Shown: positions 826-34,484 of the stretch, piece by piece
Layout: every line of letters starts with the position of its first letter
Position numbering within the stretch: position 1 is the first letter of the stretch
Assembly (NCBI GenBank): GCA_002269645.1
Contig: NIVC01001976.1
Span: 152,767-216,766 of the forward strand
Direction of reading: 5' to 3'
DNA length: 64,000 nucleotides
DNA from: Macrostomum lignano
Taxonomy: Eukaryota
Notes under the pieces: generated by a model
The model's input: only the letters and a program-made list of their open reading frames with translations
What the model was told of the DNA's origin: nothing
The model's database searches: none
Made by a program: the position numbers and the translations under genes

Positions 826-879
826 TTCTGTCCATCCAACTCTGAGCAAGTCACCCACACGCATCTCGGATCATTCCAG

Positions 880-1972: not shown

Positions 1973-2044
1973 CCCCCACATTTTAGCAATTAACCTGGAG
2001 AGAAATAAATGACTGTTTTCTATTTTGTCTAACGATCAAATAAA

Positions 2045-5704: not shown

Positions 5705-6783
5705 TGATGTGTTCCTTATTACCCGACTTTTGGTAATCAAAGAACACTCACTTCTAGCTCAGTAGCTAGGCAACCCAGTACGTCAACAGAAGGTATTTAA
5801 TTACCTTGAGTCCTTAAGTGAGAGCTCTCGTCAATACTCCTTGTTCGTTGATCTCGCTATCTGTAGCGTTCCTGTCCTTCAGGAATTCCGGGCGCCGGTC
5901 AACAGTTGATCTGGTCCGCTCTTGCAATGGTCTCCTTGACTTCTTGCCGGCCGGTTATCTGTAGTTCGGACCAATCGGAAGCTTCCAAATTAACAATGGG
6001 TACCCTGCGCCAAACTGCGGTTTAATGTAAGCCTACTCCTTCTAGTAGTGCCTCTATGCACTCCAGGTATGGCTCCGGAAACCACTGATAGTCTTCTAAG
6101 ATCTATCAGGGGCAGTCCTTCTGGAGACTGCAACCAGTAGAGTCTAAACAGACTCAGGAGTCTCAACAGACTCACAATAAACTCAAGTCACTCTTGGACT
6201 TGAGCGAGACGTCTCAACCAACAGGCGCAAATGAGTAAGGCTTACCGCAAGAACCCGACCACGTCTTCGAGTTGCTTCAGGAAGTCTGCTGCAGAGCTTC
6301 CTCTTCGGAGCTTTCTCTCTCGGAGATTCTGTGGCTCCGGGTCCGTTCCGGACCACTTGTATTTATAGGCAAATGGACCCCCATGAGGTCACGTGGGTCC
6401 TACTCTTCAGCTGTCAAAAAGGTCACGGTTTGGTTGCTGTCAAACTTGGCAGGGTAGAAAGTTACTCCATTGGTTCAGTGTAAAAGCGCGTGATTGGTCA
6501 TCGCATTCGAGTTATTTTTAGTTACATTTGATTGGGTCACGTGCGTACGGTTGAATGATGCATCTTTCCTGGGGTTTGCGTTCGACACGTACAGGTTACA
6601 CGTGATTGGGTGATTTCTAAATTTAGCATGCTCAAGGTCTCTCTTTTTCTATTGGTTAGTCAGAATATACTTATAATTCAAAGCATACTTTTATTCATGC
6701 TCTTCAACTTACTACTGAATAAAATGTGTGAGTAGTACGTTAACACTTTTATGTCTTTTTTACGGGAGGTAGAACACTCTACA
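5705..6783. mobile_element. Solo-LTR-like element (1,079 bp) nested in gag
   Basis: TGATGTG...CTCTACA termini with 4-bp TSD CGGC (5701-5704, 6784-6787). Removing it rejoins gag in frame. Confidence 0.85.
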
Positions 6784-6874
6784 CGGCTTTGCTCTGGTCA
6801 TTCTTTTCCGTTGCGCTAATGTAAAAACCGAGGCGCTTGAAATACTGTTCGACATCGGGGTAGCACAGCGGCAT
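6784..6874 (-). pseudogene. gag: Gag N-terminal segment
   Basis: MPLCYPDVEQYFKRLGFYISATEKNDQSKA(V) continues into LIATCGDAAFSLI once the insert is excised. Confidence 0.75.
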
Positions 6875-6970
6875 CTCCCCCCAGTCGGAAGTCGAGTCCG
6901 GAAGACATCGGAATGAAGATTTGGTGACTGCAGTATCGTCCCCCGGAGAATTAAATTTTCCTCGTCGCCA

Positions 6971-7140
6971 TGTTGTACTTTTCGTACTAATGGAGACGAA
7001 TGCAAGGTGCCGAGTTAGGAAGAGATCGTAGATGCATGCAGCGCGTATATTTTTTCCAGCAGCAAAGTAGCTGGCTGCTATACTTAAAATAGGAATAAGG
7101 CTTCACCCATAAACCATAGAACTTAAGTTTATACACAACA
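6971..7140 (-). repeat. 5' LTR of Mag-like element
   Basis: Direct repeat of 1803-1972, adjacent to the PBS. Confidence 0.95.
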
Positions 7141-7293: not shown

Positions 7294-8957
7294 GCAACCA
7301 ACCTGCAGTGAGAGCCACGGCGTGCGGTGTGCGGCCTGCACAGGACACGTGCCATGCGATCAAGTGCTGCAGCAGTTTCTGTGAGGTCAGGATTAGAAAA
7401 CTGATTGATGACACATATATTCCAGTTCACCTCGTTCGGGCGACCAGACCGAGCTCGACCAACGAGCTCAGAGTGAGCTTCAGCTTCCAAGAGAAACACA
7501 TCATGAGACGGCTGAGCACAGTCCAGGGCCAGCTGTTCACACTCATCAAGTTCATCTTCAAGAGACACTTGCCGCTCACTCTGGACACACCTGGACTCAA
7601 GACCTACCATGCAAAGACTCTGCTCTTCACAATGCTAGAGAGGCATGGCACAGATCCTGAAACTGAGGCTTGGCAGCCCCACAATCTGATCACTCTGCTC
7701 AAGGAGTCTCTCGACATGATGCTGAGCTTCATCGACTCAAGCAGCTCGCCCGATGAGTGCATGCCGCACTTCTTCATGCCCGACGCTCCGCTCTACTTCA
7801 AGAACGCTGGAATCGGTGGCGACTTTGACAACACAAAGGCGAGGATTCGAGACCGACTTTGTGAGCTGAGAAGCGACATCGGCGGAGTGGTCGAGCAGCT
7901 GAGGAGTCTCGTGAGACCTCTCCAGCCAGAGAAGTTCTACTTTCACCCGTTCACTCTGCTGCCTCTGAGTGCGCCGCCTGCTGTCACGGAGGAAAGGGAC
8001 AGTAGATACTATATACTAGAGAAATTCCGGTTCGAACACGTGTACAGTGTGGTGCATCAGTGTGTGAGCGAGCTGCAGTCGGAATCGAGCGACAGAGATA
8101 CCCTGATGAGGCAGCTCAGTCTCCTGCATGAGCTGCAGTGGTGCAAGTGCGCCGCCCTGTGCATGACCGTCATGGCGCATTTGAAGTTTGGAGAATCTGA
8201 GAAGGCTGAGAGACTCGCGATGGAGCTGCAGAGACATCAGGTTGAGTCAGGGTTGAAGCCACAGGATATTCAAGTATATGACTTGCCAAAAGACTCAGAC
8301 TGGGCGTGGAGGTTCTGCCTCCCCTGCGACTCTCCGCCTCGCTTCCCATTCCTTCCCGAGTTCACGCAGACTCTGTTCACAGCCAGACTGTCGCAGCCTC
8401 TCTCCTCCCACCTGTACGTGAACTTCCGCTGCCTGAGCTGGAGTCTCCAAGCTGAGCTGCTCCGCAATCCCGCACCTGCAATTGAACTGGAGGATTGGAA
8501 GCGAGAGCTGGAAGATGAGCCGGACTTGGAGGAGCTGCTCACTCTGGCTCACTACAGCGACTGCCGCGAGCACGTGGAGCTCAGCCTTCAGCAGATGGAG
8601 ATGATCGAGGAAGAGAGACGCGTCACCATGGAGACGCAGGACGAGGAGAAGATCGGCTGGGTCAGGCAGAAGAGGTGGCGAGTTTCGAACCGCAGCGGCA
8701 GCGACAGCGGCGCTCACCGCAGCAGGGAAGATGAGGAGCGGAGGCTGTGGGCGAGGGCGAGGCTGCGTCGAGACGGCGGGGCCGACTTTGGGCGCCTGGT
8801 TGCCATGGAAACTGCAGCGGAGCAGAGAGACAGCTGGACTCACGCCAAGCTCAGTCGGATGAGACTAGAGAAGCTGGAGAGACTTGATGCAGCAGCCGGA
8901 GTCCTCAAAGTCGAGTCGCAAAGTCGAGGTCGGAAAAGGAAGGCCGAGTCAGACTGA
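7294..8957 (+). CDS. Gene 1 exon 4: Mab-21/cGAS C-lobe plus helical tail
   Basis: Acceptor CCCTGCAG|GC gives G|GC in frame with ORF 7308..8957. Motifs QDTCHAI, LRVSFSFQEKHIM, LIKFIFK, LKTYHAKTLLF, MPHFFMP. Ends RGRKRKAESD*. Confidence 0.88.
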
Positions 8958-17917: not shown

Positions 17918-20875
17918 ATGAGCCAACAAATCAGTGCCGATGAGGCCGCCAAGACAGGAAATATCCAGGCACTCAAACATCATCTGGACCTTCAGAGAGA
18001 AACAAACAGGATATATCTTTTTTGCAAAAGCTATTCTAAACTTGCCGCAAGAAAGGGTCAGTTAGACGTGGTCAAGTTTCTCGTGTCTAAAGTCACTGAC
18101 CAAACAAACAGAGATCAGTGCTGCATCGAGGCTGCAGAATCTGCTGCATACAATGATCAGTGGAAAGTCATCAAGTTTCTCGTGCCTGAAGTCGCTGACC
18201 AAACAAAAAGAGATCAGTGCTGCATCGAGGCTGCCACATCTGCTGCATACAATGGTCAGTTAGAAGTGGTCAAGTTTCTCGTGCCGAAAGTCGCTGACCA
18301 AACAAAAAGAGATCAGTGCTGCATCAAGGCTGCCAAATCTGCTGCATACAATAGTCAGTTAGAACTGGTCAAGTTTCTCGTGCCGAAAGTCGCTGACCAA
18401 ACAAAAAGAGATCAGTGCTGCATCGAGGCTGCCAAATCTGCTGCAGTCGAGGGTCACTTAGAAGTCGTCAAGTTTCTCGTGCCGACAGTCGCTGACCCAA
18501 CAAAAAGAGATCAGTGCTGCATCGAGGCTGCAGAATCTGCTGCTGACAATGATCAGTGGGGAGTCGTCAAGTTTCTCGTGCCGACAGTCGCTGACCAAAC
18601 AAAAAGAGATCAGTGCTGCATCGAAGCTGCCACATCTGCTGCATACAATGATCACTGGGAAGTCGTTAAGTTTCTCGTGTGGATAGTCGCTGACCAGACA
18701 AAAAGAGATCAGTGCTGCATCGAGGCTGCCAAATCTGCTGCATACAATGGTCAGTTAAAAGTGGTCAAGTTTCTCGTGCCGAAAGTCGCTGACCAAACAA
18801 AAAGAGATCAGTGCTGCATCGAGGCTGCCAAATCTGCTGCAGTCGAGGGTCACTTAGAAGTCGTCAAGTTTCTCGTGCCGACAGTCGCTGACCCAACAAA
18901 AAGAGATCAGTGCTGCATCGAGGCTGCAGAATCTGCTGCTGACAATGATCAGTGGGAGTCGTCAAGTTTCTCGTGCGACAGTCGCTGACCAAACAAAAAG
19001 AGATCAGTGCTGCATCGAAGCTGCCACATCTGCTGCATACAATGATCACTGGGAAGTCGTTAAGTTTCTCGTGTGGATAGTCGCTGACCAGACAAAAAGA
19101 GATCAGTGCTGCATCGAGGCTGCCAAATCTGCTGCATACAATGGTCAGTTAAAAGTGGTCAAGTTTCTCGTGCCGAAAGTCGCTGACCAAACAAAAAGAG
19201 ATCAGTGCTGCATCAAGGCTGCAATATCTGCTGCAGTCAAGGGTCACTTAGAAGTCGTCAAGTTTCTCGTAGCGATAGTCGCTAACCAGACAAAAAGAGA
19301 TCAGTGCTGCATCGAGGCTGCAAAATCTGCTGCATACAATGGTCAGTTAGAAGTGGTCAAGTTTCTCGTGCCGAAAGTCGCTGACCAAACAAAAAGAGAT
19401 CAGTGCTGCATCAAGGCTGCAATATCTGCTGCAGTCAAGGGTCACTTAGAAGTCGTCAAGTTTCTCGTGGCGATAGTCGCTGACCAAACAAAAAGAGATC
19501 AGTGCTGCATCGAGGCTGCAGAATGTGCTGCATACAATGGTCAGTTAGAAGTGGTCAAGTTTCTCGTGCCGAAAGTCGCTGACCAAACAAAGAGAGATCA
19601 GTGCTGCACCGAGGCTGCAAAATGTGCTGCATACAATGGTCACTTAGAAGTCGTCAAGTTTCTCGTGCCGAAAGTCGCTGACCAAACAAAAAGAGATCAG
19701 TGCTGCATCAAGGCTGCCAAATCTGCTGCAAGAAATGGTCAGTGGGAATTCGTTAAGTTTCTCGTGCCGACAGTCGCTGACCAAACAAAAAGAGATCAGT
19801 GCTGCATCGAGGCTGCCAAATCTGCTGCATACAATAGTCAGTTAGAACTGGTCAAGTTTCTCGTGCCGAAAGTCGCTGACCAAACAAAAAGAGATCAGTG
19901 CTGCATCGAGGCTGCCAAATCTGCTGCAGTCGAGGGTCACTTAGAAGTCGTCAAGTTTCTCGTGCCGACAGTCGCTGACCCAACAAAAAGAGATCAGTGC
20001 TGCATCGAGGCTGCAGAATCTGCTGCTGACAATGATCAGTGGGGAGTCGTTAAGTTTCTCGTGCCGACAGTCGCTGACCAAACAAAAAGAGATCAGTGCT
20101 GCATCAAGGCTGCCAAATCTGCTGCTGACAATTATAAGTGGGAAGTCGTTAAGTTTCTCGTGCCGATAGTCGCTGACCTGACAAAAAGAGATCAGTGCTG
20201 CATCGAGGCTGCCAAAACTGCTGCAAGCGAGGGTCAGTGGGAAGTCGTCAAGTTACTCATCTTGTGTCTCTCAAGTTCGGATAAGAGAGCGAATCTCCGT
20301 TTCCAATACGCAGTCCCGGCTTGCTCTCGTCTCCGCGAAGATGTCGTTGCCTCCCTCGGCCTTGAGCCCGACTGGCTCTTCCAATCCAGCACCATCCTCA
20401 GCTTTACTGCAGCAATGGCCATCGAAGGCAGGAACTCTGTTCTCAACGACACACTCTCTCGTATGCAGCCAGCTCACATCACACAGCTGCTCCGTCTCTC
20501 CATCTCTCAAAGACACGTCGCACATGCTGTCGCAATTGCTGTCACACTGATCAATGATGAGCGAGTCAGCACACAGCATGTCGATCTGCCAGACAGCACT
20601 GGAGCCACTGCTCTCATGCTGGCAGCTGATGCAGGTCATCACGAGCTCATTGAGAAACTCATCGATCTCGGTGCGTCAGTGTGTGCTGAAGACAGTCAGG
20701 GTCGGACTGCTCTGTCACGAGCGTGCGAAGCCGGTCACGTGCGAGCAGCCAAGGCTCTGAAGGACGGAGGAGCGGATGCGAGTCATCGAGACGGTCAGGG
20801 TCAGACGTGTGCGCAGGTGGCAGAGCGATTCGAGCGGTGGCAGGTGCTGCGGCTGCTGGATCCCATTGGAGCGGG
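17918..20875 (+). CDS. Gene 2 exon 1: 22 variable 33-aa ankyrin-like repeats plus ~3 canonical ankyrin repeats
   Basis: Unit ADQTKRDQCCIEAAKSAAYNGQLEVVKFLVPKV (99 bp). Canonical C-terminal repeats GATALMLAADAGHHELIEKLI and GRTALSRACEAGHVRAAKAL. Phase-2 donor GG|GTGAGT (intron starts 20876). Two 1-bp deletions near 18955-18977 split the ORF. Coding sequence upstream of 17918 is possible (acceptor CTTCTAG at 17888). Confidence 0.85.
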
Positions 20876-21631
20876 GTGAGTGTTGGTCTAGGCAAAACTG
20901 AGCCAGGTCATGTTTGCATGCGAAGAAGACTACGATTGAACAGAACCATGCTCACTGGCAAGCGCAAATGTACAAACTGTTAGGGGTAAAACGATAGCGC
21001 GCAAGAATGACCAGTCACGGGAGGGAGAGAGAGAGAAAGTGACAGTGAAACAACGTGAAAACTAAGGTACAACTCGAACAGTGAGTGAGGCGGGAATTTT
21101 GCGAACATCTTTTCATGATATTATCATTTTTTTAAGCTAAGCACAAGCAATCTGGAGCCCCCCTACGGGGTGCACACATGGACAATTCCTTCTTCTGTTT
21201 TATAAATCACCTTATTCGAGTAAAATTGTCACGGACAAAGATGTTTCCTAAGAATCTCTATTTTGTGAAAGTAACAAAAATGCGAAAAATTACAACAAAA
21301 TAACACAACAAAGATAACACGCATTTGTCTTAATAGAATGAATAACTCAGACCGCAAGCATCCCCCAAATAGCAAGCATCCTCCGGTAGCATGCACCCCC
21401 TCCCTAGATAGCAAGTACCCCCCAGATGGAGAGCAACCCAGACACGAAGCATCCTACCCCCCCCCCCCCCAAGATGATAGAAAGCAACCCAGACAGCAAG
21501 CAATCCTACCCTCCCCCCCCCAAGATACAAAGCATACGCCCCAGCAAGCACCCCCAAACAATAGCAAGCACCCCCAAAATACAATCTCAAGTATCCCCCA
21601 GATAGCATACCCCAAGATGGCAAGATTCTTA

Positions 21632-22517
21632 GCAATAATCCTTGGTTTATCAAGTGCAGTAATCCTTGGTTCATCAAGTGCAGTAATTCTTGGTTCATCA
21701 AGTGCAGTAATTCTTGGTTTATCAAGTGCAGTAATCCTTGGTTTATCAAGTGCAGTTCCTTGGTTTATCAAGTGCAATAATCCTTGTTTCATCAAGTGCA
21801 GTAATCCTTGGTTCATCAAGTGCAGTAATCCTTGGTTTATCAAGTGCAGTAATCCTTGGTTTATCAAGTGCAATAATCCTTGGTTTATCAAGTGCATTAA
21901 TCCTTGGTTTATCAAGTGCAGTAATCCTTGGTTTATCAAGTGCAATAATCCTTGGTTTATCAAGTGCAATAATCCTTGGTTTATCAAGTGCAGTAATCCT
22001 TGGTTTATCAAGTGCAGTAATCCTTGTTTCATCAAGTGCAGTAATCCTTGGTTCATCAAGTGCAGTAATCCTTGGTTTATCAAGTGCAATAATCCTTGGT
22101 TCATCAAGTGCAGTAATCCTTTGTTTATCAAGTGCAGTAATCCTTTGTTCATCAAGTGCAGTAATCCTTGTTTCATCAAGTGCAGTAATCCTTGGTTCAT
22201 CAAGTGCAGTAATCCTTGGTTTATCAAGTGCAGTAATCCTTGTTTCATCAAGTGCAGTAATCCTTGGTTCATCAAGTGCAGTAATCCTTGGTTTATCAAG
22301 TGCAGTAATCCTTGTTTCATCAAGTGCAGTAATCCTTGGTTCATCAAGTGCAGTAATCCTTGGTTTATCAAGTGCAGTAATCCTTGGTTTATCAAGTGCA
22401 ATAATCCTTGGTTTATCAAGTGCAGTAATCCTTGGTTTATCAAGTGCAGTAATCCTTGGTTCATCAAGTGCAGTAATCCTCGGTTTATCAAGTGCAGTAA
22501 TCCTTGGTTTAGCAAGT
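21632..22517. repeat. 24-bp satellite, ~37 copies (intron 1 of gene 2)
   Basis: ATCAAGTGCAGTAATCCTTGGTTY. Confidence 0.97.
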
Positions 22518-23716
22518 TGATGTAACCACGTTTTGATCGCGGGGTCATGTCAGGAAATTTTCGAAATGTCCCCGATCCCCTTTGACCCACTGGGCAGAGC
22601 TGTCGAGACTGGACCGGGTGCCTGACCAGGCGCAATGACTCCCGCTCTGTAGCGACCCCCTGCTGTCTCTGTTCCGTCTCCCACTCAGACACACTTGCCC
22701 TTCCGGAGCCCCCTGTTTGTGCACCTCGTCTGCCTCCCCATTTCTCATGCGCCACACCCCATGCATCATGTACTTCTCATGTTTCCCATCTTTTTGTCAA
22801 CGTTATAGCACGGTTTTCTTGCGCTGTCCCTTCTTCATCCCGTGCCTACTTAGAGTATTGCTTGTGCTCCTCGTCACCCTATCTCCTTTTAGAATCCCAA
22901 ATGGTGACGCAAGGCTCGTGATCCCTCCTTCACCCCGATGACTCGATCATCACCCTCCTCTTTCGCAGCCTTTTCTCATGCTACGAGTATTATTCTCTTA
23001 TCAAAATTTCTCATGCGACACCCACCCCTCCTCCGCCTCTATTATTCTCTTTTACTATTTTTTGTTCTCCTTTGTGCACATAATTATCACATTTTTCCAG
23101 ATTTTCTCGTTTTTTTGTTCTCGTTTTCGCACCCAATTGGCATCCCTCTCTCGATTTTTGCTCTGCTATTGTTCTCGGTTCTCCCCAATTATCCCCGTTT
23201 TCCATTTCCTTTGATCTCGTTCTGGATCCCATTGTTCTTATTTGCTTACGCAACACTTCTTCGGCTCCCCGCTGTGCTCATTTTCCCCCACCCCTCCTCC
23301 AAATTGCGCAATTCTCCCATTTCTCATGTTGCTATGCCGTTGTCATACTTCTCATCATGACTCATTGACGCCATTTTCCCGGCAGCCAATCAGAGAGAGG
23401 GAGTCTTGGAAACGAGCTTGGAGCGGCCGCTGTGAGGACTATTTAAAGAAGTGATTTTCGGCTTGATAGCCTCCAGAAGTCTTTCTTTCCTTCCTTCGGA
23501 TGGTTGCCTTTGGCCTTTGCTACGGCTAACGCCTAGGGCTTGTACCTTCGGTCCTACCTTTGGACTCGTTTCGTCTATAAGACGAACCTATGCCTGCCCG
23601 CGGTCCAGCATGCTCAGCATCACCTGAGCTTCATCAGCGCCTCGTCGCTTCAGCGCATCGCCACTTCACTACCTGCCTGTCTGCAGTCAACAGCCGCCCT
23701 CGGTCACTCCATCGCC

Positions 23717-23758
<42 letters not shown>

Positions 23759-24450
23759 AGCTGCCGGTGAGTTCCTGTACTGATACTCTAATCGACCTTG
23801 CTTATCCGGGGTTTGCTTATTTCCCATTGCTTGATTAGAGAACTGAGCCATTTGTGTACCGTACTTTGCTGCATTTTACTCAATAGTGAAGCCGCCGAAT
23901 CGCCTGCTTATTTCGCCTAAGGGCCTAATTATTAAAAATTACTAAACTCCTCCTTATTCACTCTTTCACCACCATTTCACTCATGAGTTGCTGAGCCTTT
24001 CTCCCTGGGTGACAAAGCATAAGGAAGTTTGGGTAAGCTAATGGCCTCTCCCTGTGCAAACCCCGCCTGTGAGTGCGTGCTGCGGGTCCGTGTGTGCGTG
24101 CAGTAGAGGGAATTAGCGAGTTGTGGCACAGAATGGCAGCAGGAAGGTTGCAACCCCATGCTGACGCGTCCCTTCGCCCTGAGCAATCTGAACTTTAGCT
24201 AGCACATGTTCACCTCACACTACTCTTAGTAATTGAAGCCGCAAGTCCGCCTCATTCACAGCCACAAAGGATCCCCTGCTGAGAAATCCTCCAGGTTGAT
24301 CCCAGAATACCCGATTGTGCCCAAAGCAGAGTCCTTTTTGGGCGGGACAGTCTGGAGCTGGAGGTCCTTCAGGTAATTGCCCGGTCATAGGCAGCCTACG
24401 GTCATTGCTCCTCCCTGCGAAGCGGACGGCCATCAAGGGCGGTTACATCA
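22518..24450 (+). mobile_element. Solo-LTR-like element family A (1,933 bp)
   Basis: TGATGTAACC...GGTTACATCA termini. Flanks AAGT/AATT; the orthologous copy at 50906 has a perfect AAGT TSD. Internal CCAAT and TATA-like box, and (CT)n. Orientation is arbitrary. Confidence 0.8.
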
Positions 24451-26046
24451 AATTGCAATAATTCTTGGCTTAGCAAGTGCTACGTGGCAAAATGGCGAGC
24501 ACAGTAAAGAAGAGGAGAAAAAGATGGGCATCAGTTTGCTCAGGTGCAGTCCACGGCAGACCGCAGCCGGTTTGATATTTTTAAATCATCAAGAATCATC
24601 ATCCAACTATACTAATTGTCTAATCCAACTATACTAAACGTCTAAGATCTGTTTATCTGTCTGTCTGTCTGTCTGTCCATCTGAAACGCTCTAGAGATTG
24701 AACCGATTGACGAATTTTGATCGCGTTTTCGCTAAAAGATCTGGAAAGAAGAAAGTTAAAATTTCTTTAATCTGCTTCAATGCTAAAGGAATTAAATATT
24801 CGAAAAATGGTTTTAAATGGCGTTTTCAATGTATTTTTTATCAACCTGCTTGCAGCGAGAGAATTCACAGCCAATTTAAATGATTGCGCCAGAGCCAACT
24901 GATAAGAAAACTCACTGGGCCCCACTGCCGAGATAATTACTCTATTTAAATTGCGCAACCATACCAGGGGTCAAAAAAATACTCTGGATGCTGGCAGACA
25001 GCTCTTATACGTCTAAGATCTGTTTTTCTGTAACGCTCTTTTACTGGGGCTACGCTAAGCTTCTAGAGCAATGCTAATCGGTTTTAAGTGCTAATTTGCA
25101 AAGGGTATTGCTAATCTGGGTGAGCAGCGCGAATCGGGGAGAGCAGTGCTAATCTGACGCATATAATAATTAGTAATAAATATGTAAGAAGATTGCAAAT
25201 CAAATTTCAACTGCAAGTTGCAAACATTTCAAATGGTTTCAATTATTGAGAAGCATCGAGATTAGTGGCCATCTGCTCACTGATTGTGCAAAACAGTGCT
25301 GGTGAGCCATCATTGCTAAACTGCTGGTGAACCATTGCTAAACTGCAGAATATTCTGCAAAACTAAGGCCGTTCAATTCTGGGCAAGTTTGCTGAGGACA
25401 CTGAGGAGAACTGCAGATTGTCGAAAGGATCATTCAGTCTGCAGAGGGGACAAGCTGTAAACAGTTTCTCAAGACTTATGAGCGTCGTATAGCTGCAAAC
25501 TGCTGAGTGGATAACTGCGGACTGATTGGGGGGCAGACTTCTGAGGATAATAACTATATACAGAGTTTTGAGCGGATAATAACTTTTGAGGATTAATTGC
25601 CAGTTGTTGGAGGAATTACTGCGGACTGCTGAGTGAATTATTTTTGCTAGCTGAGGGGACAATTCTAGCCCTAATTTTAATGCTGAGGTATTAAATGCTT
25701 AAGTTGATAAAAGTTGTATTGACTGCAAAGTGGATAAATGGAGGCTGCTAAGAGATAACTGCAGTCTGTTTTGCGGGATTAGATGAAGGGATCATTTCAG
25801 GTTGTTGTGGTGATAACTGCCGATTTCTGAGGGTTAACTTCAAACTGCTGAACTTACTAAACCTCTTGAAATGCTAAACTTCTTAAATAGCAAATGGTTT
25901 ATTTCGACCATCTGTCAATAGGCACAATAACCGCAGTAGGCAGGTAGTAACAGGCATAGACTGAAGTTGGCGGTTCGAGTCTGCATTGGAGCAAAGAATT
26001 TATCTTTGTGACCTGTGACAATAATGATTGTCACAGGTCAGTGCTG

Positions 26047-26690
26047 AACCATTGCTAAACTGCTGGTAAACCATTGCTAAACTGCTGGTAAACAAATTGC
26101 TAAAGTGGTGATGAACCATTGCTAAACTGCTGGTGAACCATTGCTAAACTGCTGGTGAACCATTGCTAAACTGCTGGTGAACCATTGCTAAACTGCTGGT
26201 GAAGCATTGCTAAACTGCTGGTAAACCATTGCTAAACTGCTGGTGAACCATTGCTAAACTGCTGGTGAACCATTGCTAAACTGCTGGTGAACCATTGCTA
26301 AACTGGTGGTGAGCCATTGCTAAACTGGTGGTGAGCCATTGCTAAACTGCTGGTAAACCATTGCTAAACTGCTGGTGAACCATTGCTAAACTGCTGGTGA
26401 ACCATTGCTAAACTGGTGGTGAACCATTGCTAAACTGGTGGTGAGCCATTGCTAAACTGGTGGTGAGCCATTGCTAAACTGGTGGTGAACCATTGCTAAA
26501 CTGGTGGTGAACCATTGCTAAACTGCTGGTGAACCATTGCTAAACTGCTGGTGAAGCATTGCTAAACTGCTGGTAAACCATTGCTAAACTGCTGGTGAAC
26601 CATTGCTAAACTGCTGGTGAACCATTGCTAAACTGCTGGTGAACCATTGCTAACCTGCTGGTAAACAAATTGCTAAAGTGGTGATGAACC
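26047..26690. repeat. 22-bp minisatellite, ~29 copies
   Basis: CCATTGCTAAACTGCTGGTGAA; stray monomers at ~25310-25345. Confidence 0.95.
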
Positions 26691-26809
26691 ATTCCATTGT
26701 TTAAGAAAGGCTACCTTTAAAGAGAAGAAAACTCAGCGAAAAAATAGCGAAAAAAATCACCATGTTAAACATAACAGAAGCGCTCTGTCGAACATAAAAG
26801 ACTCATTGG

Positions 26810-28350
26810 GATTTGCTAAGATGTCAAGGCTCATGATAGACATTCTGAGATGTCGTGTCAAGGCTCAGGGGGAATTGCTATAATGATGTGATTCTGGGGA
26901 GAATTGCTATGATTTCAAGGTTCATTTGGGAAATCGCTGAGGTATCAAGGCTCAATAAAAATGCTTTGCTGTCAAGGATCATGGAGATAACTACAAGCAC
27001 TAAAATGCTGCGACTGTTGGAGGAATTGCCGACATTGTTAGGGAAAGAGTAAGACGTAAATCATAAATGAATTGGCTTGTCAAACATAAAAGACTCATTG
27101 GGGAGTTGCTAGAATGTCAAGGCTCATGGGGAATATCTGAATTATAATGTGGCTCAATGCTCAAGGGGAAATGTTGTGATTGCAACACATGGGGATATTT
27201 CCGATATTTTGTGGCTTAAATAGGAGTTGCTGAGATATCAAGGCTCATTATGGAATCACTGAGATTTCAGAGCTCACGGGGGATTCCTGTAATGCTGTAG
27301 GCTGTGACTCTTGGGTATTGCTGAGATGCTAAGGTTCACAGGGGAATGGCTGAAATTTCAAATGCTCCTAAAGGGAATAGCTGAAATTCACGAAATTTCA
27401 AGGTTAATTGGGTATACGCTCAGGCTCAAGGCTCACGGGGGATATTGCTATTAGTACCCGGCCCGGAAGGAACCCAGAGAAACAGAGGAACACCGAGGTT
27501 GGCGAGAACACGGAGGCGAAGCAACGGCCTCCCACAAGACTCGAATGCTTGTATATTTGGTGACGAACACGGCATTAACAGCCGAATAAAAACCGAAGAA
27601 AAAATTTTTTTTTTAAATCGACCAAGGTTAGCGAGAGCGAGAACGCAGGAGCTCCTGAGAAAACGGGGCAATAAAAACCCTCAGCAGGCGGAGGGGGGAG
27701 GGCCGCTGCACAAAGGAGGGTAGAGACACACAACGTACAACCCCCCCCCCCACGCCAACCCCGCGCACGCACAAAGGCCCAAAACCAACCCCCCCGGGGG
27801 TACTAAAGCTGGTCTGCTCAAAGGCACGCCTCAGAGCAAACCAAGGCAACATTCCAAGACTCACTTATGGGTTAGGGTTAGGGGCTTCGGGTCAGTTTTG
27901 GTTCAATCATAGAATAACCGCTCAACCATCAATTAGACTTACTAAGATGGGAATTGCTAAGATTTCAAGGCTCATGGGGGGAATCGCTGGGTTGACAAGG
28001 CTCATGAAGAAATTGCTGAGTTATCAAGGCTCATATGGGGATTGCTGAATTGGGGAGAGGGGAGTTGAGTTGTTGGGATGTCAAGGCTTACTGAGCTGGA
28101 AGAATTGAGTTGATGTCAATGATCGAGTTTAATTGCTGCGATGTCGATGCTTACTGAGGGAATTGCTGAGATTTCAAGGCTTACTGGGGTAATTGCTGAG
28201 ATTTCAAGGCTTATTGGGGGAATTACTGAGATGTCAAGGCTCGAGTTTAATTGCTGCAATGTCGATGCTTAATAAGGGAATTTCTGAGATGTCAAAGCCT
28301 ACTGGGGAAATTGTTGAGATGTCAAGGCTCATGGGGGATGGCTGAATTGT
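26810..28350. repeat. Degenerate ~27-bp tandem repeat
   Basis: Recurrent GGGAATTGCTGAGATTTCAAGGCTCAT-like units; interrupted at 27451-27945. Confidence 0.7.
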
Positions 28351-29091
28351 TGGGGAGGGGGGGTTAGGTTGTTGAGCGATTGTCAGATCGTCAAGTAGTA
28401 CGGCTCAAGTAGCTCATTTAATTCAGATAATGAAATAGTACACACAAGTGATTCTGAATTCTGCTGATAGGAAATACCAGCGTGTTTATTAAAGGTTTGA
28501 TTCTTTGAGTTAGGCTAATAAAGAGGGGGTCAAAGGCCGTCAGGGATTGACATATTGAGCTCCTGTTACGGACCAGAATATGCCCAGGCCAATGACGATA
28601 TGCTCTAAGATTTTGTGCTTGAAAGGATAAGCACTATTTGCTGATTGAAAAAGGGTTTTGGGCTGATGAAGGAAACTATTTTGCTGGTAAAAGTTTTGAT
28701 TCATAGCAATTTATTTTTTTTCAAAATGAGAAAAATTAATTTTTGATTAATGGAAATGAAAATTAATGGTTACTGTTGGGCCAAAACAAAAACCACTTGG
28801 TGTCATTTTAAAGCCCCTCAGCGGGGAGCTAAATGGCTAGTCCATCCAATATACTAAAACTAAAGTCTCAAATCTCCGGCCCAGCAAGCGAGCTTCTCCT
28901 TCAATCTGCGGAATTCACTCGCTCTTGGCTCGACTCTCTTTCTCATTGATACTTCTACCTTAAAGAGCGTTGGAAATTGATGAAGCTGCAGATGAAGATT
29001 AATTTTTAAATCAATCAAGAAATATGTGGCGCAAAAAACATTGTAAATCCTCACTGCTGTGAGAACCCTGGCTTTCCTTTCCGCATTTCAG

Positions 29092-29145
29092 AAGCCCAGA
29101 GGCCCGGCAGGCAGCCGCTCACGGCTTGGATTCGGGCCTCCATCG
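29092..29145 (+). CDS. Gene 2 exon 2: 54-nt linker exon
   Basis: CTTTCCTTTCCGCATTTCAG| ... CATCG|GTGAGT. Phase 2 to phase 2, open (SPEARQAAAHGLDSGLH); conserved at 53079-53132. Confidence 0.7.
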
Positions 29146-29271
29146 GTGAGTCTGACGGTTCGGCTTTCTGCCGCATTGCGCCTTCCAACAGGCTGGCAGC
29201 TTGGGGCAGAAATTGCAGCGAAACTCAGCAGGGTTGAGATTGGGTTGGACTGAGTGCTGCAGCAGCTGCAC

Positions 29272-29729
29272 CCAACAGGGACCGGGTGCCCCAGTCCATC
29301 GGGGGCACGGTCATGGACACTGCCTTGTCGTGGCGACCCGGCTTAATCCTGTTGTCGGCCCAAGCCGGTTGCCGGCGGCAGGAGAACCAAAGTGTCCTCC
29401 ACCCTTCGGCTGTCGACAGGGACACAGCGGCTGACTGCGTCCCTGCCGCCCTGCTGGCAGGCAGGCGCTCCGACTCGGCTGGGAGTGCGACCGACCAGGC
29501 GCCGAAGCCAGTGTCGGCCGGTCCAGCACTCGCCCCATGCGAGGCTGCGTCTGGTCCCCTGGCTGGCTCGTCTGGGATGACGTTGGCGTTGACTGGCTCC
29601 GGTGGGAGGATAACATGCCATGCTCCCGCGCTGGCAGCAACCACCCTACCGGAGTCCAGGATGATGCGCGGCTTGTCCCCTCCCTGCCCGGCGCTCGGAG
29701 GCGCTTCCTGACAGGCTATCCCCAACATC

Positions 29730-29786
<57 letters not shown>

Positions 29787-29806
29787 AACAACAACAATAA
29801 CAACAA
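29272..29806 (+). mobile_element. Retroposed (non-LTR or SINE-like) insertion with (CAA)n tail
   Basis: 13-bp TSD GCAGCAGCTGCAC (29259-29271, 29807-29819); (CAA)n tail at ~29725-29806; absent from units A and C. Confidence 0.8.
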
Positions 29807-29944
29807 GCAGCAGCTGCACTCTCAGCTCTCCTGCTTGAGATGCCAGTCTGAGTGCTGCAGCAGCTGCACTCTCAGCTCTCCTGCTTGTTCTGTCCAACTC
29901 TAAGCATTAAGCAAGTCACCCACACGCATCTCGGATCATTCCAG

Positions 29945-30309
29945 GCTCTCAGACGACTCCCAGCAAGACAGGCGCTTGAGCTTTGAGCTGCATCAACTGC
30001 TCAGCAATGCGGGATTCACCGAGCAGAGAGCAAAGCGTCAGCAGATGCTGGCTGACTGGCTGCAACATGTCGCTCAAGTCCTCACACAGGATCGCAGGCA
30101 GATGACGGGCAGCTACGCAGAGGGCTGGGCCAACAGTCTGGTGCAAGTGAACGGCAGGACAGCTGCAGACTCGGACATTGACTGGACTGTGCTGGTTGCT
30201 GGGCAAGAGTTCCATTTGGAGGGTGGCTGCTATAAATTGTATGGTTCCTGCCAAAACGCCACTCGGCTGCAGGTCACGGAGGGCCACGCTCAGGTGGCAG
30301 TGGGAGCAG
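29945..30309 (+). CDS. Gene 2 exon 3: cGLR catalytic N-lobe
   Basis: TTCCAG|G ... GCAG|GTGAGT; 365 nt = 1+363+1; MTGSYAEGW...DSDIDW. Confidence 0.87.
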
Positions 30310-31012
30310 GTGAGTGAGGCTGGGTTCATCATCAGAATGCTGAGATCCGCATGCAACTGGAAGCCCATTAACTTTGCTCAATTTTAAATTCGCAACCGAG
30401 TGGCGCCCAGCCTCCAGCAGCTTCTGTGACTGCGAATGTCGGCTTGGGTGCTGAAACAAGCGGCAGGCGAAATTGAAAAGAAAACTCTGATGCCAACTGG
30501 CTGAGCCGGGCCATTGGGTTTTGAATTCACAGGCTCCGATTGCAGCAGAGTGGGTGCAGCGGTGCTTGGGTGACTCACGGTAGGCGGCAGGGCTCTGCTG
30601 AGGTGCTGCTGCTCTCACTTGAAAAATTTCAAACAAAATAAACCGAAGCCGCCCTGACTGCCTGATTGGTGCCTTGCTGCTCGCACTGAGTCCTGATGAT
30701 GCTTGAGCAGCTGTGCTCAGCTGCAACCTGATGAAGCAAGAGCAGCTGAGGGCAAACTCAGTGGGTGCAGAGGTTTTTATTCGGCTCTTCAGAGGGCGCC
30801 AAAATTTTGTGGCGTCTCATCAAGCAGCCAAAAATCTATTGAATACCAGCTAAAGATTTAAAGGCTAACATACAATAACATATGTACAATAGCATGTGTA
30901 TATTCAGCTAGTGTATAAATACGAGGCAAATAAATCGTAAGTAGCAAACAGGTGCGCTCCCTCGCAACTGATGACACAACTTTATGTATCTATAATTTCT
31001 GTGCAAACGATT

Positions 31013-32595
31013 GCGGCGCCAGTTCCTGACCGACTTTCACGAGGGCATCGGCGGCCACTTCCAACTCCCGACGAAAATTCCCAAGGAGTCGACACTCACA
31101 GCCGGCTCAAGCGCTGGTGGTTGCTGCTGAGGGGGACCGAGCTGCGGACGCCGGCGCCACCGGAACTCCCTGCGCGACACCGCAGCACTAGCTGCCCGTG
31201 GTCGCCAGGAGTTAGCGAAATGGGCGACAACGCCTTCTCGCTGTTTCCGGACGCACGGAGCCCCCTGCAGCTAAGTCAAGTGGTTGCTGCTGCAGGAGTT
31301 CACCTTCACCTTCAAGTGCTCAAAGGGCGTCGACAAAGTGGAGGCAGGCGGCCTGTCGAGGATGCACGAGAGACGTTTTTTATCGTCAGCAACAGAGCTG
31401 CAGCCGCAGGTGTCCAACCGAGAGATACGGCAGGCGAAGCGGGCCGATCAGAAGCTCAAGCTGGTCATCGATGCACTGGAGAACGACAGCGCGACCCCGC
31501 CAAGTTGGTCCGACAGCGGACTGCGACACCTCAGCCGCATCTGGCGGAAGTTGCGGATTCAAGACGGCTTTCTCTGTCGCGCCTTTAACGATGCTGCGGG
31601 ACAGAGGGAGGTGTCCGTGATTCCTGAGTCGAAGTTCCTGACCGACTTTCACGAGGGCATCGCGGCCACTTTGGACCGGAGAAAATGGCCGACACGCTGA
31701 AGCAGACCGCGTACTGGCCTGGGCTGCAGAGCGACGCGGTGAGTTTCTGCCAGGAGTGCCAGACCTGCCAGCTGAAAAAGGCGCAGCACCGGCCAGCAGC
31801 CCCACTCGGTGAGATGCCGATCGGCAAGCCCTAGCAGACGGTGGCGATCGATGTTCTGAAGGTGCCGACATAAGACCGAGGCAACAGCTACCTGCTGGTG
31901 ATGCAGGACCAGTTCTCCAAGTTCCTGACCGCCATGCCGATGCCAGATCAGACCGCCAAGACCATCGCGGACGCTGCAGTGAAGGTCTTCTCCCTGCTCG
32001 GAGTCCCGTCTATCATCCACTCGGACCGGGGCGCGAACTTCGAGAGCGAGCTGTTCCAGGAGACGCTGCGAGCACTGGGCATCAGGAAGACGCGCAACAC
32101 GCCGTACCATCCGCAGGGAAATGGACTGGTGGAGCGCGGTAACAAGTCGCTGCTGCAGCTGCTGAGGCTTTTCGCCGAGACCGAGTCCAGCTGGGAGGAG
32201 CAGCTGTCGCTGGCGGTCCTGTCCTACAACTCCAGGGTCCACAGCTCAACCAAGGTGGCACCGCTGACGGTGATGACCGGCTACGACTCGGCGCTCCCAA
32301 CGAAGATGAGGAGCAGCATCAGCACCTACTTGGCACTACTGGGGTGGCGGCTGGCCTGGATTCGCGAATTCGTCAAGGAGAACTTGGTAGCCGCAAGACA
32401 GCAGCAGAAGGCGGCTCACGACAAGAAGGCGTTAGATCTGTTGCAGTTTCTCCAAGGCGCCGAGGTGCTGCTCAGCATTGAAATGTGGCGCTCGAAGCTG
32501 GCGCCCTATGCGCAAGCGGTTTGAAGCCCAGCCCGACTCTGACCAGCTCCGCCAGCAACCGGTGACCCACCAGGTCGTGCCGGAGCCCAGCCCAG
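31013..32595 (+). mobile_element. Degenerate gypsy RNaseH/integrase relic in intron 3 of gene 2
   Basis: LLQEFTFT...GLSR, YWPGL...CQECQTC, QDQFSKF, HSDRGANFES, YHPQGNGLVER. In-frame stops and frameshifts; no LTR seen. Confidence 0.88.
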
Positions 32596-32997
32596 GACTT
32601 TTTTTGCGTTTTCTCTTTTTATTGGGGGTAACAAAAGTACGAATAGTTACTTATCTAAACAGGTGTTAAGCGATCGAATAAATGGTCGAATGAATGACAG
32701 AGCTTTGAAACTACGCGCTTGTATTAAGTTTTCTTATCAAGTCTTTAAGTCCAATTCAATATTTTTCATGATTGCATGCCGGGTTGCTGCTTAAAAATAT
32801 GAAAATTGGGTGGAAACTTCTACCTTTTGGCCTTTTAGGTTTGAAAGGAGAGTAAATTTAATTTAACTGTCGAATCATCAGAACTGTATAGCAGCTGAGA
32901 GAAAATATTGTTGTTTTAAATGATATTTCATTGGATTCAAACCAACCCATCCTTTTCACTCGTCACAAAGCGACTCTCCGCTCACTGCGCCCTGCAG

Positions 32998-34484
32998 GCA
33001 GCCAACCTGCAGTGACAGCCACGGCGTGCGGTGTGCGGCCTGCACAGGACACGTGCTATGCCATTCGGTGCTGCAGAATTTTCTATGTGGACAGAATTAG
33101 AAAACAGACGGTAAACAGTGATGGGAAAATTCACCTCGTTCGGGCGACCAGACCGAGCTCGACCAACGAGCTCAGAGTGAGCTTCAGCTTCCAAGAGAAA
33201 CACATCATGAGACAGCTGAGCACAGTCCAGGGCCAGCTGTTCACACTCATCAAGTTCATCTTCAAGAGACACTTGCCGCTCACTCTGGACACACCTGGAC
33301 TCAAGACCTACCATGCAAAGACTCTGCTCTTCACAATGCTGGAGAAGCATGGCACAGATCCCGAAACTGAGGCTTGGCAGCCCCACAATCTGATCGCTCT
33401 GCTCAAGGAGTCTCTCGACATGATGCTGAGCTTCATCGACTCGAGCAGCTCGCCCGATGAGTGCATGCCGCACTTCTTCATGCCCGACGCTCCGCTCTAC
33501 TTCAAGAACGCTGGAATCGGCGGCGACTTCGACAACACGAAGGCGAGGGTTCGAGACCGACTTTGTGAGCTAAGAAGCGACATCGGCGGAGTGGTCGAGC
33601 AGCTGAGGAGTCTCGTGAGACCTCTGCAGTCAGAGAATTTCTACTTTCACCCGTTCACTCTGCTGCCTCTGACAGCGCCGCCTGCTGTCACGAAGATCAG
33701 GAAAGGACGTGACTATCCAGCTAGGTACTACAAGTTCGCAGACGTGTACAGTGTGGTGCACCAGTGTGTGAGCGAGCTGCAGTCGGAATCGAGCGACAGA
33801 GACACCCTGATGAGGCAGCTCAGTCTCCTTCGTGAGCTGAAGTGGTGCAAGTGCGCCGCCCTGTGCATGACCGCCATGGCGCATTTGAAGTTCAAGGACG
33901 ATAAGGAGGCTGGGAGACTCGCGATGAAGATGCGGGGACATCAAGTTGAGTCGGGGTTGAAGCCATTGGATATTCGAGATAAGGGTAGATACCAGTTTAG
34001 TGAGATAAAACTGCCGGAAGACTCAGACTGGGCGTGGAGGTTCTGCCTCCCCTGCGACTCTCCGCCTCGCTTCCCATTCCTTCCCGAGTTCACGCAGACT
34101 CTGTTCACAGCCAGACTGTCGCAGCCTCTCTCCTCCCACCTGTACGTGAACTTCCGCTGCCTGAGCTGGAGTCTCCAAGCTGAGCTGCTCCGCAATCGCG
34201 CACCTGCAATCGCATTCGATCATTGGATTGAACAGCTGCTTGGAGACCCGGACTTGGAGGAGCTGCTCACTCTGGCTCACTACAGCGACTGCCGCGAGCA
34301 CGTTGAGCTCAGCCTGCAGCAGATGGAGATGATCGAGAAAGAGAGACGCGTCGCCATGGAGACGCAGGACGAGGAGAAGATCGGCTGGGTCAGGCGGAAG
34401 CTGGAGAGACTTGATGCAGCAGCCGGAGTCCTCAAAAACGAGCCGCAAAGTCGAGGTCGGAAAAGGAAGGCTGAATCAGACTGA
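32998..34484 (+). CDS. Gene 2 exon 4: Mab-21 C-lobe plus helical tail
   Basis: CCTGCAG|GC; 1,487 nt = 2+1,485, open to TGA; same Mab-21 motifs as gene 1. Confidence 0.88.

What the first reader, a model, noticed from the sequence alone, without database searches (positions are those of the whole stretch)
17918..34484. Hidden four-exon gene fusing a giant ankyrin-repeat array to a cGAS-like nucleotidyltransferase, in a three-copy tandem array
Seen: the ankyrin ORF ends on GG|GTGAGT (phase 2). A 54-nt exon with a strong acceptor and donor follows (phase 2 to 2), then TTCCAG|G opens the NTase exon (phase 2 in, phase 1 out), then CTGCAG|GC opens the Mab-21 exon (phase 1). All junctions are in phase and conserved in every copy: gene 2 17918-20875/29092-29145/29945-30309/32998-34484; gene 3 43948-46993/53079-53132/53487-53857/58450-59883; gene 1 exons 3-4 at 880-1241/7294-8957. 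The model also explains why genes 2 and 3 have no ATG upstream of the GS motif in the NTase exon. Predicted products are ~1,621 and ~1,635 aa after indel correction. Established: cGAS/Mab-21-fold receptors (cGLRs) make cyclic dinucleotides upon ligand sensing, and ankyrin arrays are binding scaffolds. Inference: a modular innate-immune receptor family in which a variable repeat sensor gates second-messenger synthesis, analogous to the LRR-plus-signalling layout of NLRs. I cannot tell from sequence whether this exact architecture has been described.
Basis: partly seen in the sequence, partly recalled or inferred. Interest (0 to 1): 0.95.

Follow-up and report, generated by a model that had tools for sequence, protein, structure and literature searches.

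The report
Flatworm ankyrin–cGAS-like receptor gene cluster
The four-exon gene joining a long ankyrin-repeat array to a cGAS-like enzyme is real, but it belongs to a large Macrostomum lignano family that is already annotated and listed in the published cGLR survey, and the two complete copies in this window carry frameshifts.

Summary
Every junction is a canonical GT-AG site, in phase, in all copies. The copy straddling the window start (gene 1) is GenBank PAA62074.1 (Macrostomum lignano BOX15_Mlig034155g1, 1217 aa). It maps at 100% identity to exactly the four predicted exons, and that annotation derives from RNA-seq.

The C-terminal part is a true cGAS/Mab-21 domain:
- Pfam Mab-21_C scores above its cut-off.
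- hhalign against mouse cGAS gives 92.8% probability.
- An AlphaFold model of a paralogue (pLDDT 84) has only cGAS, MAB21L1 and Sp-cGLR1 among its 50 listed Foldseek matches.
- The GS…DID…D catalytic motif is intact.

The gene is neither hidden nor new. More than 60 ANK+Mab-21 proteins of this species are in NCBI or UniProt. Li et al. 2023 list ANK-cGLR fusions as an architecture and cloned an 84%-identical paralogue (PAA68676.1).

The array has at least four copies, and only gene 1 is intact as assembled. Gene 2 has two 1-nt deletions. Gene 3 has three frameshifts and a truncated 3' end. Gene 0, upstream of the window, is also broken. dN/dS between copies is 0.5-1.0.

Enzymatic activity, ligand and receptor are unknown, and no STING domain was detected in the genome. 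Verdict: new, possibly dead, members of a known kind.

The parts
880..1241 (+). Gene 1 (PAA62074.1) exon 3: NTase N-lobe with MTGS and DID motifs. Exons 1 and 2 lie just upstream of the window at contig 150659-152233 and 152693-152746.
   Evidence: tblastn 100% identity; junctions
1803..7140 (-). LTR retrotransposon (Ty3/gypsy-like: gag zinc knuckle, protease, RT, RNase H, integrase) inserted in intron 3 of gene 1. The flanking direct repeats, 1803-1972 and 6971-7140, are 99% identical.
   Evidence: Pfam; direct repeats
7294..8957 (+). Gene 1 exon 4: third catalytic Asp, Mab-21 C-lobe, family-specific C-terminal domain and basic tail. Intact.
17918..20875 (+). Gene 2 exon 1: ATG, about 23 degenerate 33-aa ANK units (99-nt array 18056-20258), a linker and 3 canonical ANK repeats. 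Two 1-nt deletions, after 18957 and after 18976, break the frame.
29092..29145 (+). Gene 2 exon 2: 54-nt mini-exon (SPEARQAAAHGLDSGLHR), phase 2 to 2.
29945..30309 (+). Gene 2 exon 3: NTase N-lobe (spine helix, MTGS, DSDIDW).
32998..34484 (+). Gene 2 exon 4: third Asp (PAQDTC), Mab-21_C lobe, C-terminal domain and RGRKRK tail. Open to the stop codon.
43948..46993 (+). Gene 3 exon 1: ANK array (99-nt units 44086-46343) plus canonical ANK repeats. Frameshift at about 46576-46580.
53079..53132 (+). Gene 3 exon 2: 54-nt mini-exon.
53487..53857 (+). Gene 3 exon 3: NTase N-lobe.
58450..59883 (+). Gene 3 exon 4: frameshifts at about 58937 and about 59704-59713. Homology to the other copies stops at 59880, so the basic tail is lost.

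Best explanation
The window holds part of a tandem cluster of at least four Macrostomum lignano genes of the lineage-expanded ANK-cGLR family. Each gene has four exons. Exon 1 encodes a degenerate 33-aa ankyrin-unit array (8 regular units found in gene 1, 22-23 in genes 2 and 3) followed by 3 canonical ANK repeats. Exon 2 is an 18-codon linker. Exons 3 and 4 encode a cGAS/Mab-21-fold nucleotidyltransferase with an intact GS / D-h-D / D catalytic motif, then a ~215-aa family-specific domain and a basic tail. Shown: the exon structure; one transcript-based CDS for gene 1; the fold (on a paralogue); the motif; the family size; and the frameshifts in genes 0, 2 and 3 as assembled. Inferred: the ANK array, whose variability sits at a few positions per unit, binds a ligand or partner and controls the NTase, either by relieving autoinhibition or by clustering. 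The NTase would then make a nucleotide second messenger for a receptor that is not a recognisable STING. Gene 1 is the functional copy. Genes 2 and 3 are either decaying duplicates or carry uncorrected indel errors of the PacBio/Canu assembly.
For: - Junctions and phases are conserved in all copies.
- PAA62074.1 maps at 100% identity to the four exons, and the BOX15 annotation is built from StringTie/TACO/RNA-seq with TBONE boundary cutting.
- 38 long proteins (893-2381 aa) of M. lignano match the C-terminal 617 aa, nearly all with ANK Pfam domains, and they come from two sets of records, NCBI BOX15 proteins and UniRef-only A0A1I8 entries.
- Mab-21_C scores above its cut-off. hhalign against mouse cGAS gives 92.8%.
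- The AF2 model has pLDDT 83.9 and pTM 0.84. All 50 listed Foldseek matches are cGAS, MAB21L1 or Sp-cGLR1, with probability 1.00.
- The catalytic motif is conserved in this subfamily but lost in divergent paralogues.
- ANK variability is concentrated at positions 7, 8, 21, 24 and 28-32 of the 33-aa unit.
- Li et al. list ANK-cGLR fusions and include PAA68676.1.
Against: - No nucleotide product is documented for any M. lignano member. The five cloned by Li et al. carry no 'active' note.
- No STING_LBD hit was found in the genome.
- dN/dS between the tandem copies is 0.54-1.0, so constraint on the local copies is weak.
- Genes 2 and 3 are frameshifted and have no annotated product above 86% identity.
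- Pfam's NTase-lobe model PF03281 does not hit.
- The fold was predicted on an 84-85%-identical paralogue (P0048), not on the window's own spliced protein.
Confidence: 0.8

Rival explanations
1. Genes 2 and 3 (and gene 0) are true pseudogenes. They would be dead duplicates in a fast birth-and-death cluster, and only gene 1 would encode a protein.
For: - Gene 2 has two frameshifts. Gene 3 has three plus a truncated 3' end. Gene 0 has at least three plus a premature stop.
- dN/dS between genes 1 and 2 is 0.86 overall and 1.0 in the catalytic core.
- No annotated protein is more than 86% identical to gene 2.
Against: - The assembly is PacBio/Canu polished with Pilon. Short reads polish poorly in 99-nt arrays and in a family with at least 40 near-identical loci.
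- Both gene 2 lesions are single-base losses from 2-nt runs, 19 nt apart, which is typical of a consensus error.
- All splice sites, the catalytic motif and 1487 nt of open exon 4 are preserved in gene 2.
- A high dN/dS is also expected for immune receptors under diversifying selection.
Confidence: 0.4
2. The ankyrin ORF and the NTase/Mab-21 exons are separate transcription units. The NTase mRNA would start by spliced-leader trans-splicing at the strong acceptor of exon 2 or 3, and the fused CDS would be a read-through artefact of transcript assembly.
For: - M. lignano trans-splices about 39% of its genes, and about 7% of assembled transcripts are polycistronic precursors.
- An ANK-less paralogue is annotated (P0048, 659 aa).
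- The gene 0 model (P0055) starts inside the ANK tail and uses a different exon 1/2 junction.
Against: - The TBONE pipeline cuts at trans-splice and poly(A) evidence and still left gene 1 as one CDS.
- The ANK exon ends without a stop codon, in phase, in all four copies.
- The ANK-linker-NTase reading frame is continuous in dozens of paralogues down to about 40% identity, in both NCBI and UniRef-only records.
- Gene 3 has no usable ATG for a complete NTase.
Confidence: 0.1
3. The Mab-21 domain here is not a signalling enzyme. It would act as a non-catalytic scaffold or sensor module, as proposed for MAB21L1, and the ANK array would recruit partners without any second messenger.
For: - No STING_LBD was detected.
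- The other platyhelminth species listed in Li et al. Table S5 have 0 cGLR and 0 STING genes.
- No activity note is attached to the M. lignano enzymes in the published screen.
- Related paralogues have lost the catalytic acids, and some of those are fused to caspase domains.
Against: - The full h[QT]GS…DhDh…hDh motif is conserved in every member of this subfamily examined, in contrast to the degenerate paralogues.
- The Li et al. screen used isolated cGLR domains without the ANK array or any ligand, so it would miss ligand-gated enzymes.
- The STING search had no positive control.
Confidence: 0.3

Closest known systems
M. lignano ANK-cGLR paralogues already in databases: PAA62074.1 (identical to gene 1), PAA68676.1 and PAA93208.1 (cloned as samples 93 and 92 by Li et al. 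2023), PAA61139.1 and PAA92822.1
   Same: Same four-part layout (ANK array, linker, cGAS-like core, C-terminal domain). They are 73-86% identical over the C-terminal 617 aa and share the catalytic motif.
   Different: Genes 2 and 3 have no database entry above 86% identity and are frameshifted as assembled. ANK copy number differs (8 regular units found in gene 1, 22-23 in genes 2 and 3).
ANK-fused cGLRs of other animals (for example Stylophora pistillata) described in Li et al. 2023, Fig. 1C, 4C and S2A
   Same: A cGLR NTase core joined to ankyrin repeats in one polypeptide, interpreted as an added ligand- or protein-interaction module.
   Different: Sequence relatedness outside Macrostomum is confined to the Mab-21 C-lobe (E 1e-9 to 1e-4). 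The flatworm proteins also have an unusual CC-containing ANK unit and an extra C-terminal domain. Whether the fusions share an origin was not tested.
Vertebrate cGAS, Sp-cGLR1 and MAB21L1 (solved structures)
   Same: Bilobal Mab-21 fold (Foldseek probability 1.00, TM about 0.5 normalised to the target). Shared motifs are GS, acid-h-acid, the third Asp, WRLSFS/LRVSFS, YH(V/A)KT and H(Y/F)F(I/M)P.
   Different: 13-19% identity. The product and activating ligand are unknown. There is an N-terminal ANK array instead of cGAS's disordered basic tail, and an additional 215-aa domain with no structural match.
NLR / STAND receptors (repeat sensor plus signalling module)
   Same: By analogy only: a variable solenoid repeat array attached to a signalling domain, encoded in tandem, rapidly turning-over clusters.
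   Different: No NACHT/NB-ARC ATPase is present. The repeats are N-terminal ANK rather than C-terminal LRR. No homology is claimed.

Membership tests
cGLR / Mab-21 nucleotidyltransferase | Mab-21 C-lobe (HhH/H2TH-like, PF20266) | tested here: met
   27.2 bits (gene 2) and 25.3 bits (gene 1) against a cut-off of 24.1. hhalign of the family profile against mouse cGAS gives 92.8% over 109 columns. Weak phmmer hits outside the species are PF03281+PF20266 proteins.
cGLR / Mab-21 nucleotidyltransferase | Pol-beta-type NTase lobe recognised by Pfam PF03281 | tested here: not met
   No PF03281 hit at E<=0.1 for exon 3 or at E<=0.01 for P0048. The lobe is recognised only by motif and by fold.
cGLR / Mab-21 nucleotidyltransferase | Active-site motif h[QT]GS-X8-20-[DE]h[DE]h-X50-90-h[DE]h (the motif is quoted from my own knowledge of the cGLR literature; it was not among the passages of Li et al. 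2023 read here) | tested here: met
   QMTGS…(20 aa)…DIDW…(57 aa)…QDTC is present in genes 0, 1, 2 and 3 and in all close paralogues. It is degenerate in the caspase-fused and other divergent paralogues.
cGLR / Mab-21 nucleotidyltransferase | Bilobal cGAS fold | tested here: met
   AF2 model of paralogue P0048 (84-85% identical): pLDDT 83.9, pTM 0.84. The 50 listed Foldseek PDB hits are all cGAS, MAB21L1 or Sp-cGLR1. The window's own spliced protein was not folded.
cGLR / Mab-21 nucleotidyltransferase | Synthesis of a nucleotide second messenger on ligand sensing | not testable with these tools
   Li et al. cloned five M. lignano cGLR domains, including 84%-identical PAA68676.1. None carries an 'active' note in Table S3, and none is mentioned in the main text.
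cGLR-STING pathway | A STING receptor encoded in the same genome | tested here: inconclusive
   The six-frame HMM search with PF15009 found no candidate in the 764-Mb genome, but nothing rang in the control genomes either and exons are scored one by one.
Ankyrin-repeat proteins | Tandem 33-aa ANK repeats recognised by Pfam | tested here: met
   Ank_2 E 4.7e-66 (gene 2) and 4.1e-90 (gene 3). 99-nt period with 22.3 and 22.8 copies.
ANK-cGLR fusion (Li et al. 2023 architecture class) | ANK repeats and the cGLR core on one polypeptide, supported by a transcript | tested here: met
   Met for gene 1: the RNA-seq-derived CDS PAA62074.1 maps to the four exons. For genes 2 and 3 this is inferred only from conserved in-phase junctions.
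Intact protein-coding gene | Uninterrupted reading frame across all exons | tested here: not met
   Gene 2 has 2 one-base deletions in exon 1. Gene 3 has 3 frameshifts and a truncated end. Gene 1 is intact.

The most novel reading that the evidence does not exclude
M. lignano has a very large cGLR-like repertoire (at least 144 Mab-21_C loci, most annotated members carrying ANK arrays), although no STING domain was detected in its genome and the other platyhelminth species listed by Li et al. have neither cGLR nor STING genes. If these proteins are active, ligand-gated enzymes, they would signal through a receptor that is not STING. That route might involve the family-specific C-terminal domain, which has no structural match, or direct coupling to caspases, as in the paralogues where a catalytically degenerate cGLR-like domain is fused to ANK repeats and a caspase. 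That would be a STING-independent branch of animal cGLR immunity.
Probability: 0.25. Interest if true: 0.7.

Novelty: new member of a known kind. Interest (0 to 1): 0.3.

Why it matters
The locus itself matters little. It adds two unannotated, probably damaged copies to a family that is already in GenBank, UniProt and the cGLR survey. The family is a better target. It is one of the largest ANK-fused cGLR expansions, and it sits in a genetically tractable flatworm where transgenesis is published (Wudarski et al. 2017) and RNAi is in use (my knowledge). No STING was detected and no product or ligand is known. Testing full-length proteins, rather than isolated cGLR domains, could show whether repeat arrays gate cGLR enzymes and what lies downstream when STING is absent.

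Tried and rejected
1. The PDB profile search with the full alignment was swamped by ankyrin proteins. Repeating it with ANK-less P0048 gave only a marginal hit to cGLR1 chain 8gjy_A (E 0.011), so I relied on AF2 plus Foldseek instead.
2. The 215-aa C-terminal domain was folded separately (pLDDT 88.7) and searched against the PDB. There was no significant match (best E 0.73, TPR-like), so its fold class remains unassigned.
3. I looked for a near-identical homeologous copy of gene 2 to decide between assembly error and pseudogene. None reaches 98% identity; the best matches are gene 0 at 96% and other loci at 95% or less.
4. I looked for an annotated or transcript-derived protein for genes 2 and 3. 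None is more than 86% identical.
5. The large ORFs in introns 1 (21275-22776, 49036-50937) are open in several frames because they are 24-nt tandem repeats. The 'Cornifin' Pfam hits there are low-complexity matches and were rejected as genes.
6. Literature searches for Macrostomum with Mab21, cGLR or cGAS found no paper that discusses this family in its main text.
7. No STING sequence was available in the supplements for a protein-level genome search.
8. The kinase (P0016), ABC-transporter (P0022) and RT (P0012) 'fusions' in the hit list were not followed up. They are probably chimeric gene models.

Full report
**Origin of the window**

The window is positions 152767-216766, the 3' end, of a 216,766-nt contig. 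The assembly has 764 Mb in 5269 contigs. All strong protein matches are Macrostomum lignano BOX15_Mlig proteins. That is the Mlig_3_7 assembly, built from PacBio reads with Canu and polished with Pilon. Its GenBank annotation was derived from genome-guided RNA-seq assemblies (StringTie/TACO). Gene boundaries were cut at experimentally observed trans-splice and poly(A) sites (Wudarski et al. 2017, PMC5730564).

**Checking the observation**

- Gene 2, spliced as proposed, reads through from 18858 to the stop at 34484 without interruption.
- Upstream of that point, exon 1 changes frame twice within 20 nt. Alignment with a neighbouring repeat unit shows two single-base losses from 2-nt runs, GGGA[A]GTC after 18957 and GTGC[C]GAC after 18976.
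- Pfam confirms the ankyrin repeats (E 4.7e-66 and 4.1e-90) and a Mab-21_C domain above its gathering cut-off on exon 4.

**External confirmation of the gene model**

Searching with the C-terminal 617 residues, with candidates limited to long proteins, returned 38 M. lignano proteins of 893-2381 aa. Nearly all carry ANK Pfam domains, and many also carry PF20266.

One of them is P0010 = PAA62074.1 (BOX15_Mlig034155g1, 1217 aa). It lies on this very contig and maps at 100% identity to four blocks:

| Exon | Position | Content |
|---|---|---|
| 1 | contig 150659-152233 | ANK exon |
| 2 | contig 152693-152746 | 18-codon mini-exon |
| 3 | window 878-1243 | NTase exon |
| 4 | window 7290-8954 | Mab-21 exon |

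The same continuous ANK-linker-NTase frame appears in paralogues from many other contigs. It also appears in UniRef-only entries (A0A1I8…) that are not among the NCBI BOX15 proteins. The fusion is therefore real, and it is not hidden.

**Extent and state of the array**

The array is larger than described. A fourth copy, gene 0, lies at contig ~135200-140170. It is partly annotated as PAA62073.1. Nothing related lies further upstream, and the contig ends with the window.

| Copy | State as assembled |
|---|---|
| Gene 0 | at least three frame changes in the ANK array; premature stop after the cGAS-like core |
| Gene 1 | intact |
| Gene 2 | two 1-nt deletions in exon 1 |
| Gene 3 | frameshifts at ~46578, ~58937 and ~59708; homology ends at 59880, so the basic tail is lost |

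- No database protein is more than 86% identical to gene 2, so genes 2 and 3 are unannotated.
- Nei-Gojobori dN/dS is 0.54 for gene 0 against gene 1. It is 0.86 for gene 1 against gene 2, and 1.0 in the catalytic core.
- That pattern fits either decay or diversifying selection.
- I could not separate pseudogenisation from residual long-read indel errors. Exon 4 of gene 2 has at least 40 relatives at 89% nucleotide identity or more on over 20 contigs. None reaches 98%, so none can serve as a homeologous check.

**What the protein is**

- *Fold.* An annotated ANK-less paralogue (P0048, 84-85% identical) was folded with a 36-sequence family alignment. The model is confident (pLDDT 83.9, pTM 0.84). 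All 50 listed Foldseek PDB matches are mouse or human cGAS, MAB21L1 or the coral Sp-cGLR1. They score probability 1.00, E about 1e-7 and TM about 0.5 normalised to the target.
- *Sequence.* hhalign of the family profile against mouse cGAS gives 92.8% probability. It aligns LRVSFSFQEK with WRLSFSHTEK, TYHAKT with SYHVKT, and PHFFMP with HYFIP (the cGAS sequence was taken from Li et al. Table S3).
- *Active site.* The motif is complete: QMTGS, then DIDW 20 residues later (both in exon 3), then QDTC 57 residues further on (exon 4). It is conserved in every close paralogue. More divergent paralogues have D-M-N/S, S-I-K/E or G-I-D/S at these positions.
- *Gap in the evidence.* Pfam's NTase-lobe model PF03281 does not hit, so that lobe rests on motif and fold alone.
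- *Extra domain.* Beyond the cGAS-like core lies a ~215-aa domain. It folds confidently (pLDDT 88.7) but has no significant PDB match (best E 0.73, weakly TPR-like). An RGRKRK basic tail follows.
- *ANK array.* The array is built from an unusual 33-aa unit, VVKFLVP.VADQTKRDQCCIEAA.SAA.NG.LE. Variation is concentrated at positions 7, 8, 21, 24 and 28-32, and the framework is nearly invariant. Positions 28-29 correspond to the 'AAxxGH' positions. From my own knowledge of designed ankyrin proteins (not tested here), those face the binding surface.

**Comparison with what is known**

- Li et al. 2023 (bioRxiv 10.1101/2023.02.22.529553, PMC9980059) describe cGLRs fused to ankyrin repeats as one of the domain architectures (Fig. 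1C, S2A). They also describe ANK-fused cGLRs in Stylophora.
- Their Table S2 lists PAA68676.1 (= P0017, 84% identical to gene 1's C-terminal part over its full length) with Ank_2 domains.
- Their Table S3 shows that five M. lignano cGLR domains were cloned for the biochemical screen. These include PAA68676.1 and the close paralogue PAA93208.1.
- The 'Note' column marks the 15 enzymes chosen as active. It is empty for these rows, and M. lignano is not mentioned in the main text.
- The paper notes that 'most platyhelminthes' have no cGLRs beyond Mab21-like proteins.
- No paper I could find discusses the Macrostomum family itself.

**Family size and downstream partner**

- A six-frame search finds at least 144 Mab-21_C loci in this genome.
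- phmmer against 1.84 billion representative proteins finds 180 relatives. Every named cluster I looked up is from M. lignano. Matches outside the species cover only the Mab-21 C-lobe.
- A six-frame HMM search for the STING ligand-binding domain found nothing. There was no positive control, so this is suggestive only.
- The other platyhelminth species listed in Li et al. Table S5 have 0 cGLR and 0 STING genes.

**Mechanism**

- *Shown:* the exon structure, one transcript-supported fused CDS, the cGAS fold on a paralogue, the intact catalytic motif, variable ANK surface positions and tandem birth-and-death organisation.
- *Inferred:* the ANK array binds a ligand or partner and gates the NTase, which then makes a nucleotide signal for an unidentified receptor.

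Rival explanations:

| Rival | Confidence |
|---|---|
| Genes 2 and 3 are dead copies | ~0.4 |
| The ANK and NTase parts are separate, trans-spliced units | ~0.1 |
| The domain acts as a non-catalytic scaffold | ~0.3 |

The second rival is unlikely given the annotation, the conserved phase and the dozens of paralogues. The third is suggested by the missing STING, the lack of reported activity and the caspase-fused degenerate paralogues.

**Verdict**

The finding is a set of new, possibly defective, members of a known and already catalogued family.

Noticed in passing
window 1803-7140 (- strand coding; LTRs 1803-1972 and 6971-7140): An LTR retrotransposon with open gag (zinc knuckle), protease, RT, RNase H and integrase ORFs sits in intron 3 of gene 1. 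Its 170-nt terminal direct repeats are 99% identical, which suggests a recent insertion. It accounts for most of the 6-kb intron.
   Followed up: partly
window 31874-32524 (+) and 57078-57713 (+): Integrase-core (rve) fragments lie in intron 3 of genes 2 and 3. They are relics of another retroelement, shared by the two copies and absent from genes 0 and 1.
   Followed up: no
window 86-825 and 53240-53432 (50-nt unit); 21632-22517 and 49091-50905 (24-nt unit); 9415-10000, 10705-11660, 35189-35435, 37438-37799 and others: Introns and intergenic spacers are filled with minisatellite arrays whose copy number differs between the tandem gene copies. These arrays create long spurious ORFs in several frames.
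   Followed up: partly
window 15093-17917 versus 41108-43947: The 2.85 kb upstream of the start codons of genes 2 and 3 are 96.9% identical (97.8% over the last 800 nt). That is more similar than their coding exons (about 85-94%), which suggests recent duplication or gene conversion of the promoter region.
   Followed up: partly
window 13575-13652 and 39155-39232 (also contig 145846-145923): A 26-codon fragment homologous to residues 337-362 of the Mab-21 exon recurs once in each intergenic spacer. It looks like a relic of an older copy carried along in the repeat unit.
   Followed up: no
window 8028-8672 (gene 1) and the equivalent part of gene 2 exon 4: A ~215-aa domain after the cGAS-like core folds confidently (pLDDT 88.7) but has no significant match in the PDB. 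It is followed by an RGRKRK basic tail that could be a nuclear localisation signal.
   Followed up: yes
window 8673-8850 (gene 1 exon 4): Gene 1 carries a 58-codon in-frame segment (RWRVSNRSGSDSGAHRS…RMRLE) that is absent from genes 2 and 3. It is present in several paralogues elsewhere, so it is an indel polymorphism within the family.
   Followed up: no
paralogues elsewhere in the genome: P0034 (PAA59752.1), P0073 (PAA80948.1), P0036 (PAA93319.1): Relatives with a cGLR-like domain plus ANK repeats also carry a caspase (Peptidase_C14) domain. In P0034, the only one of the three inspected, the order is cGLR-like, ANK, caspase, and the catalytic acids are replaced (D-M-N and S). This could be a sensor wired directly to a protease.
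   Followed up: partly
contig 135200-140170 (L001, upstream of the window): A fourth tandem copy ('gene 0') has several frame changes in its ANK array and a premature stop after the cGAS-like core. Its annotated product (PAA62073.1) starts at an internal Met and uses a different exon 1/2 junction.
   Followed up: partly
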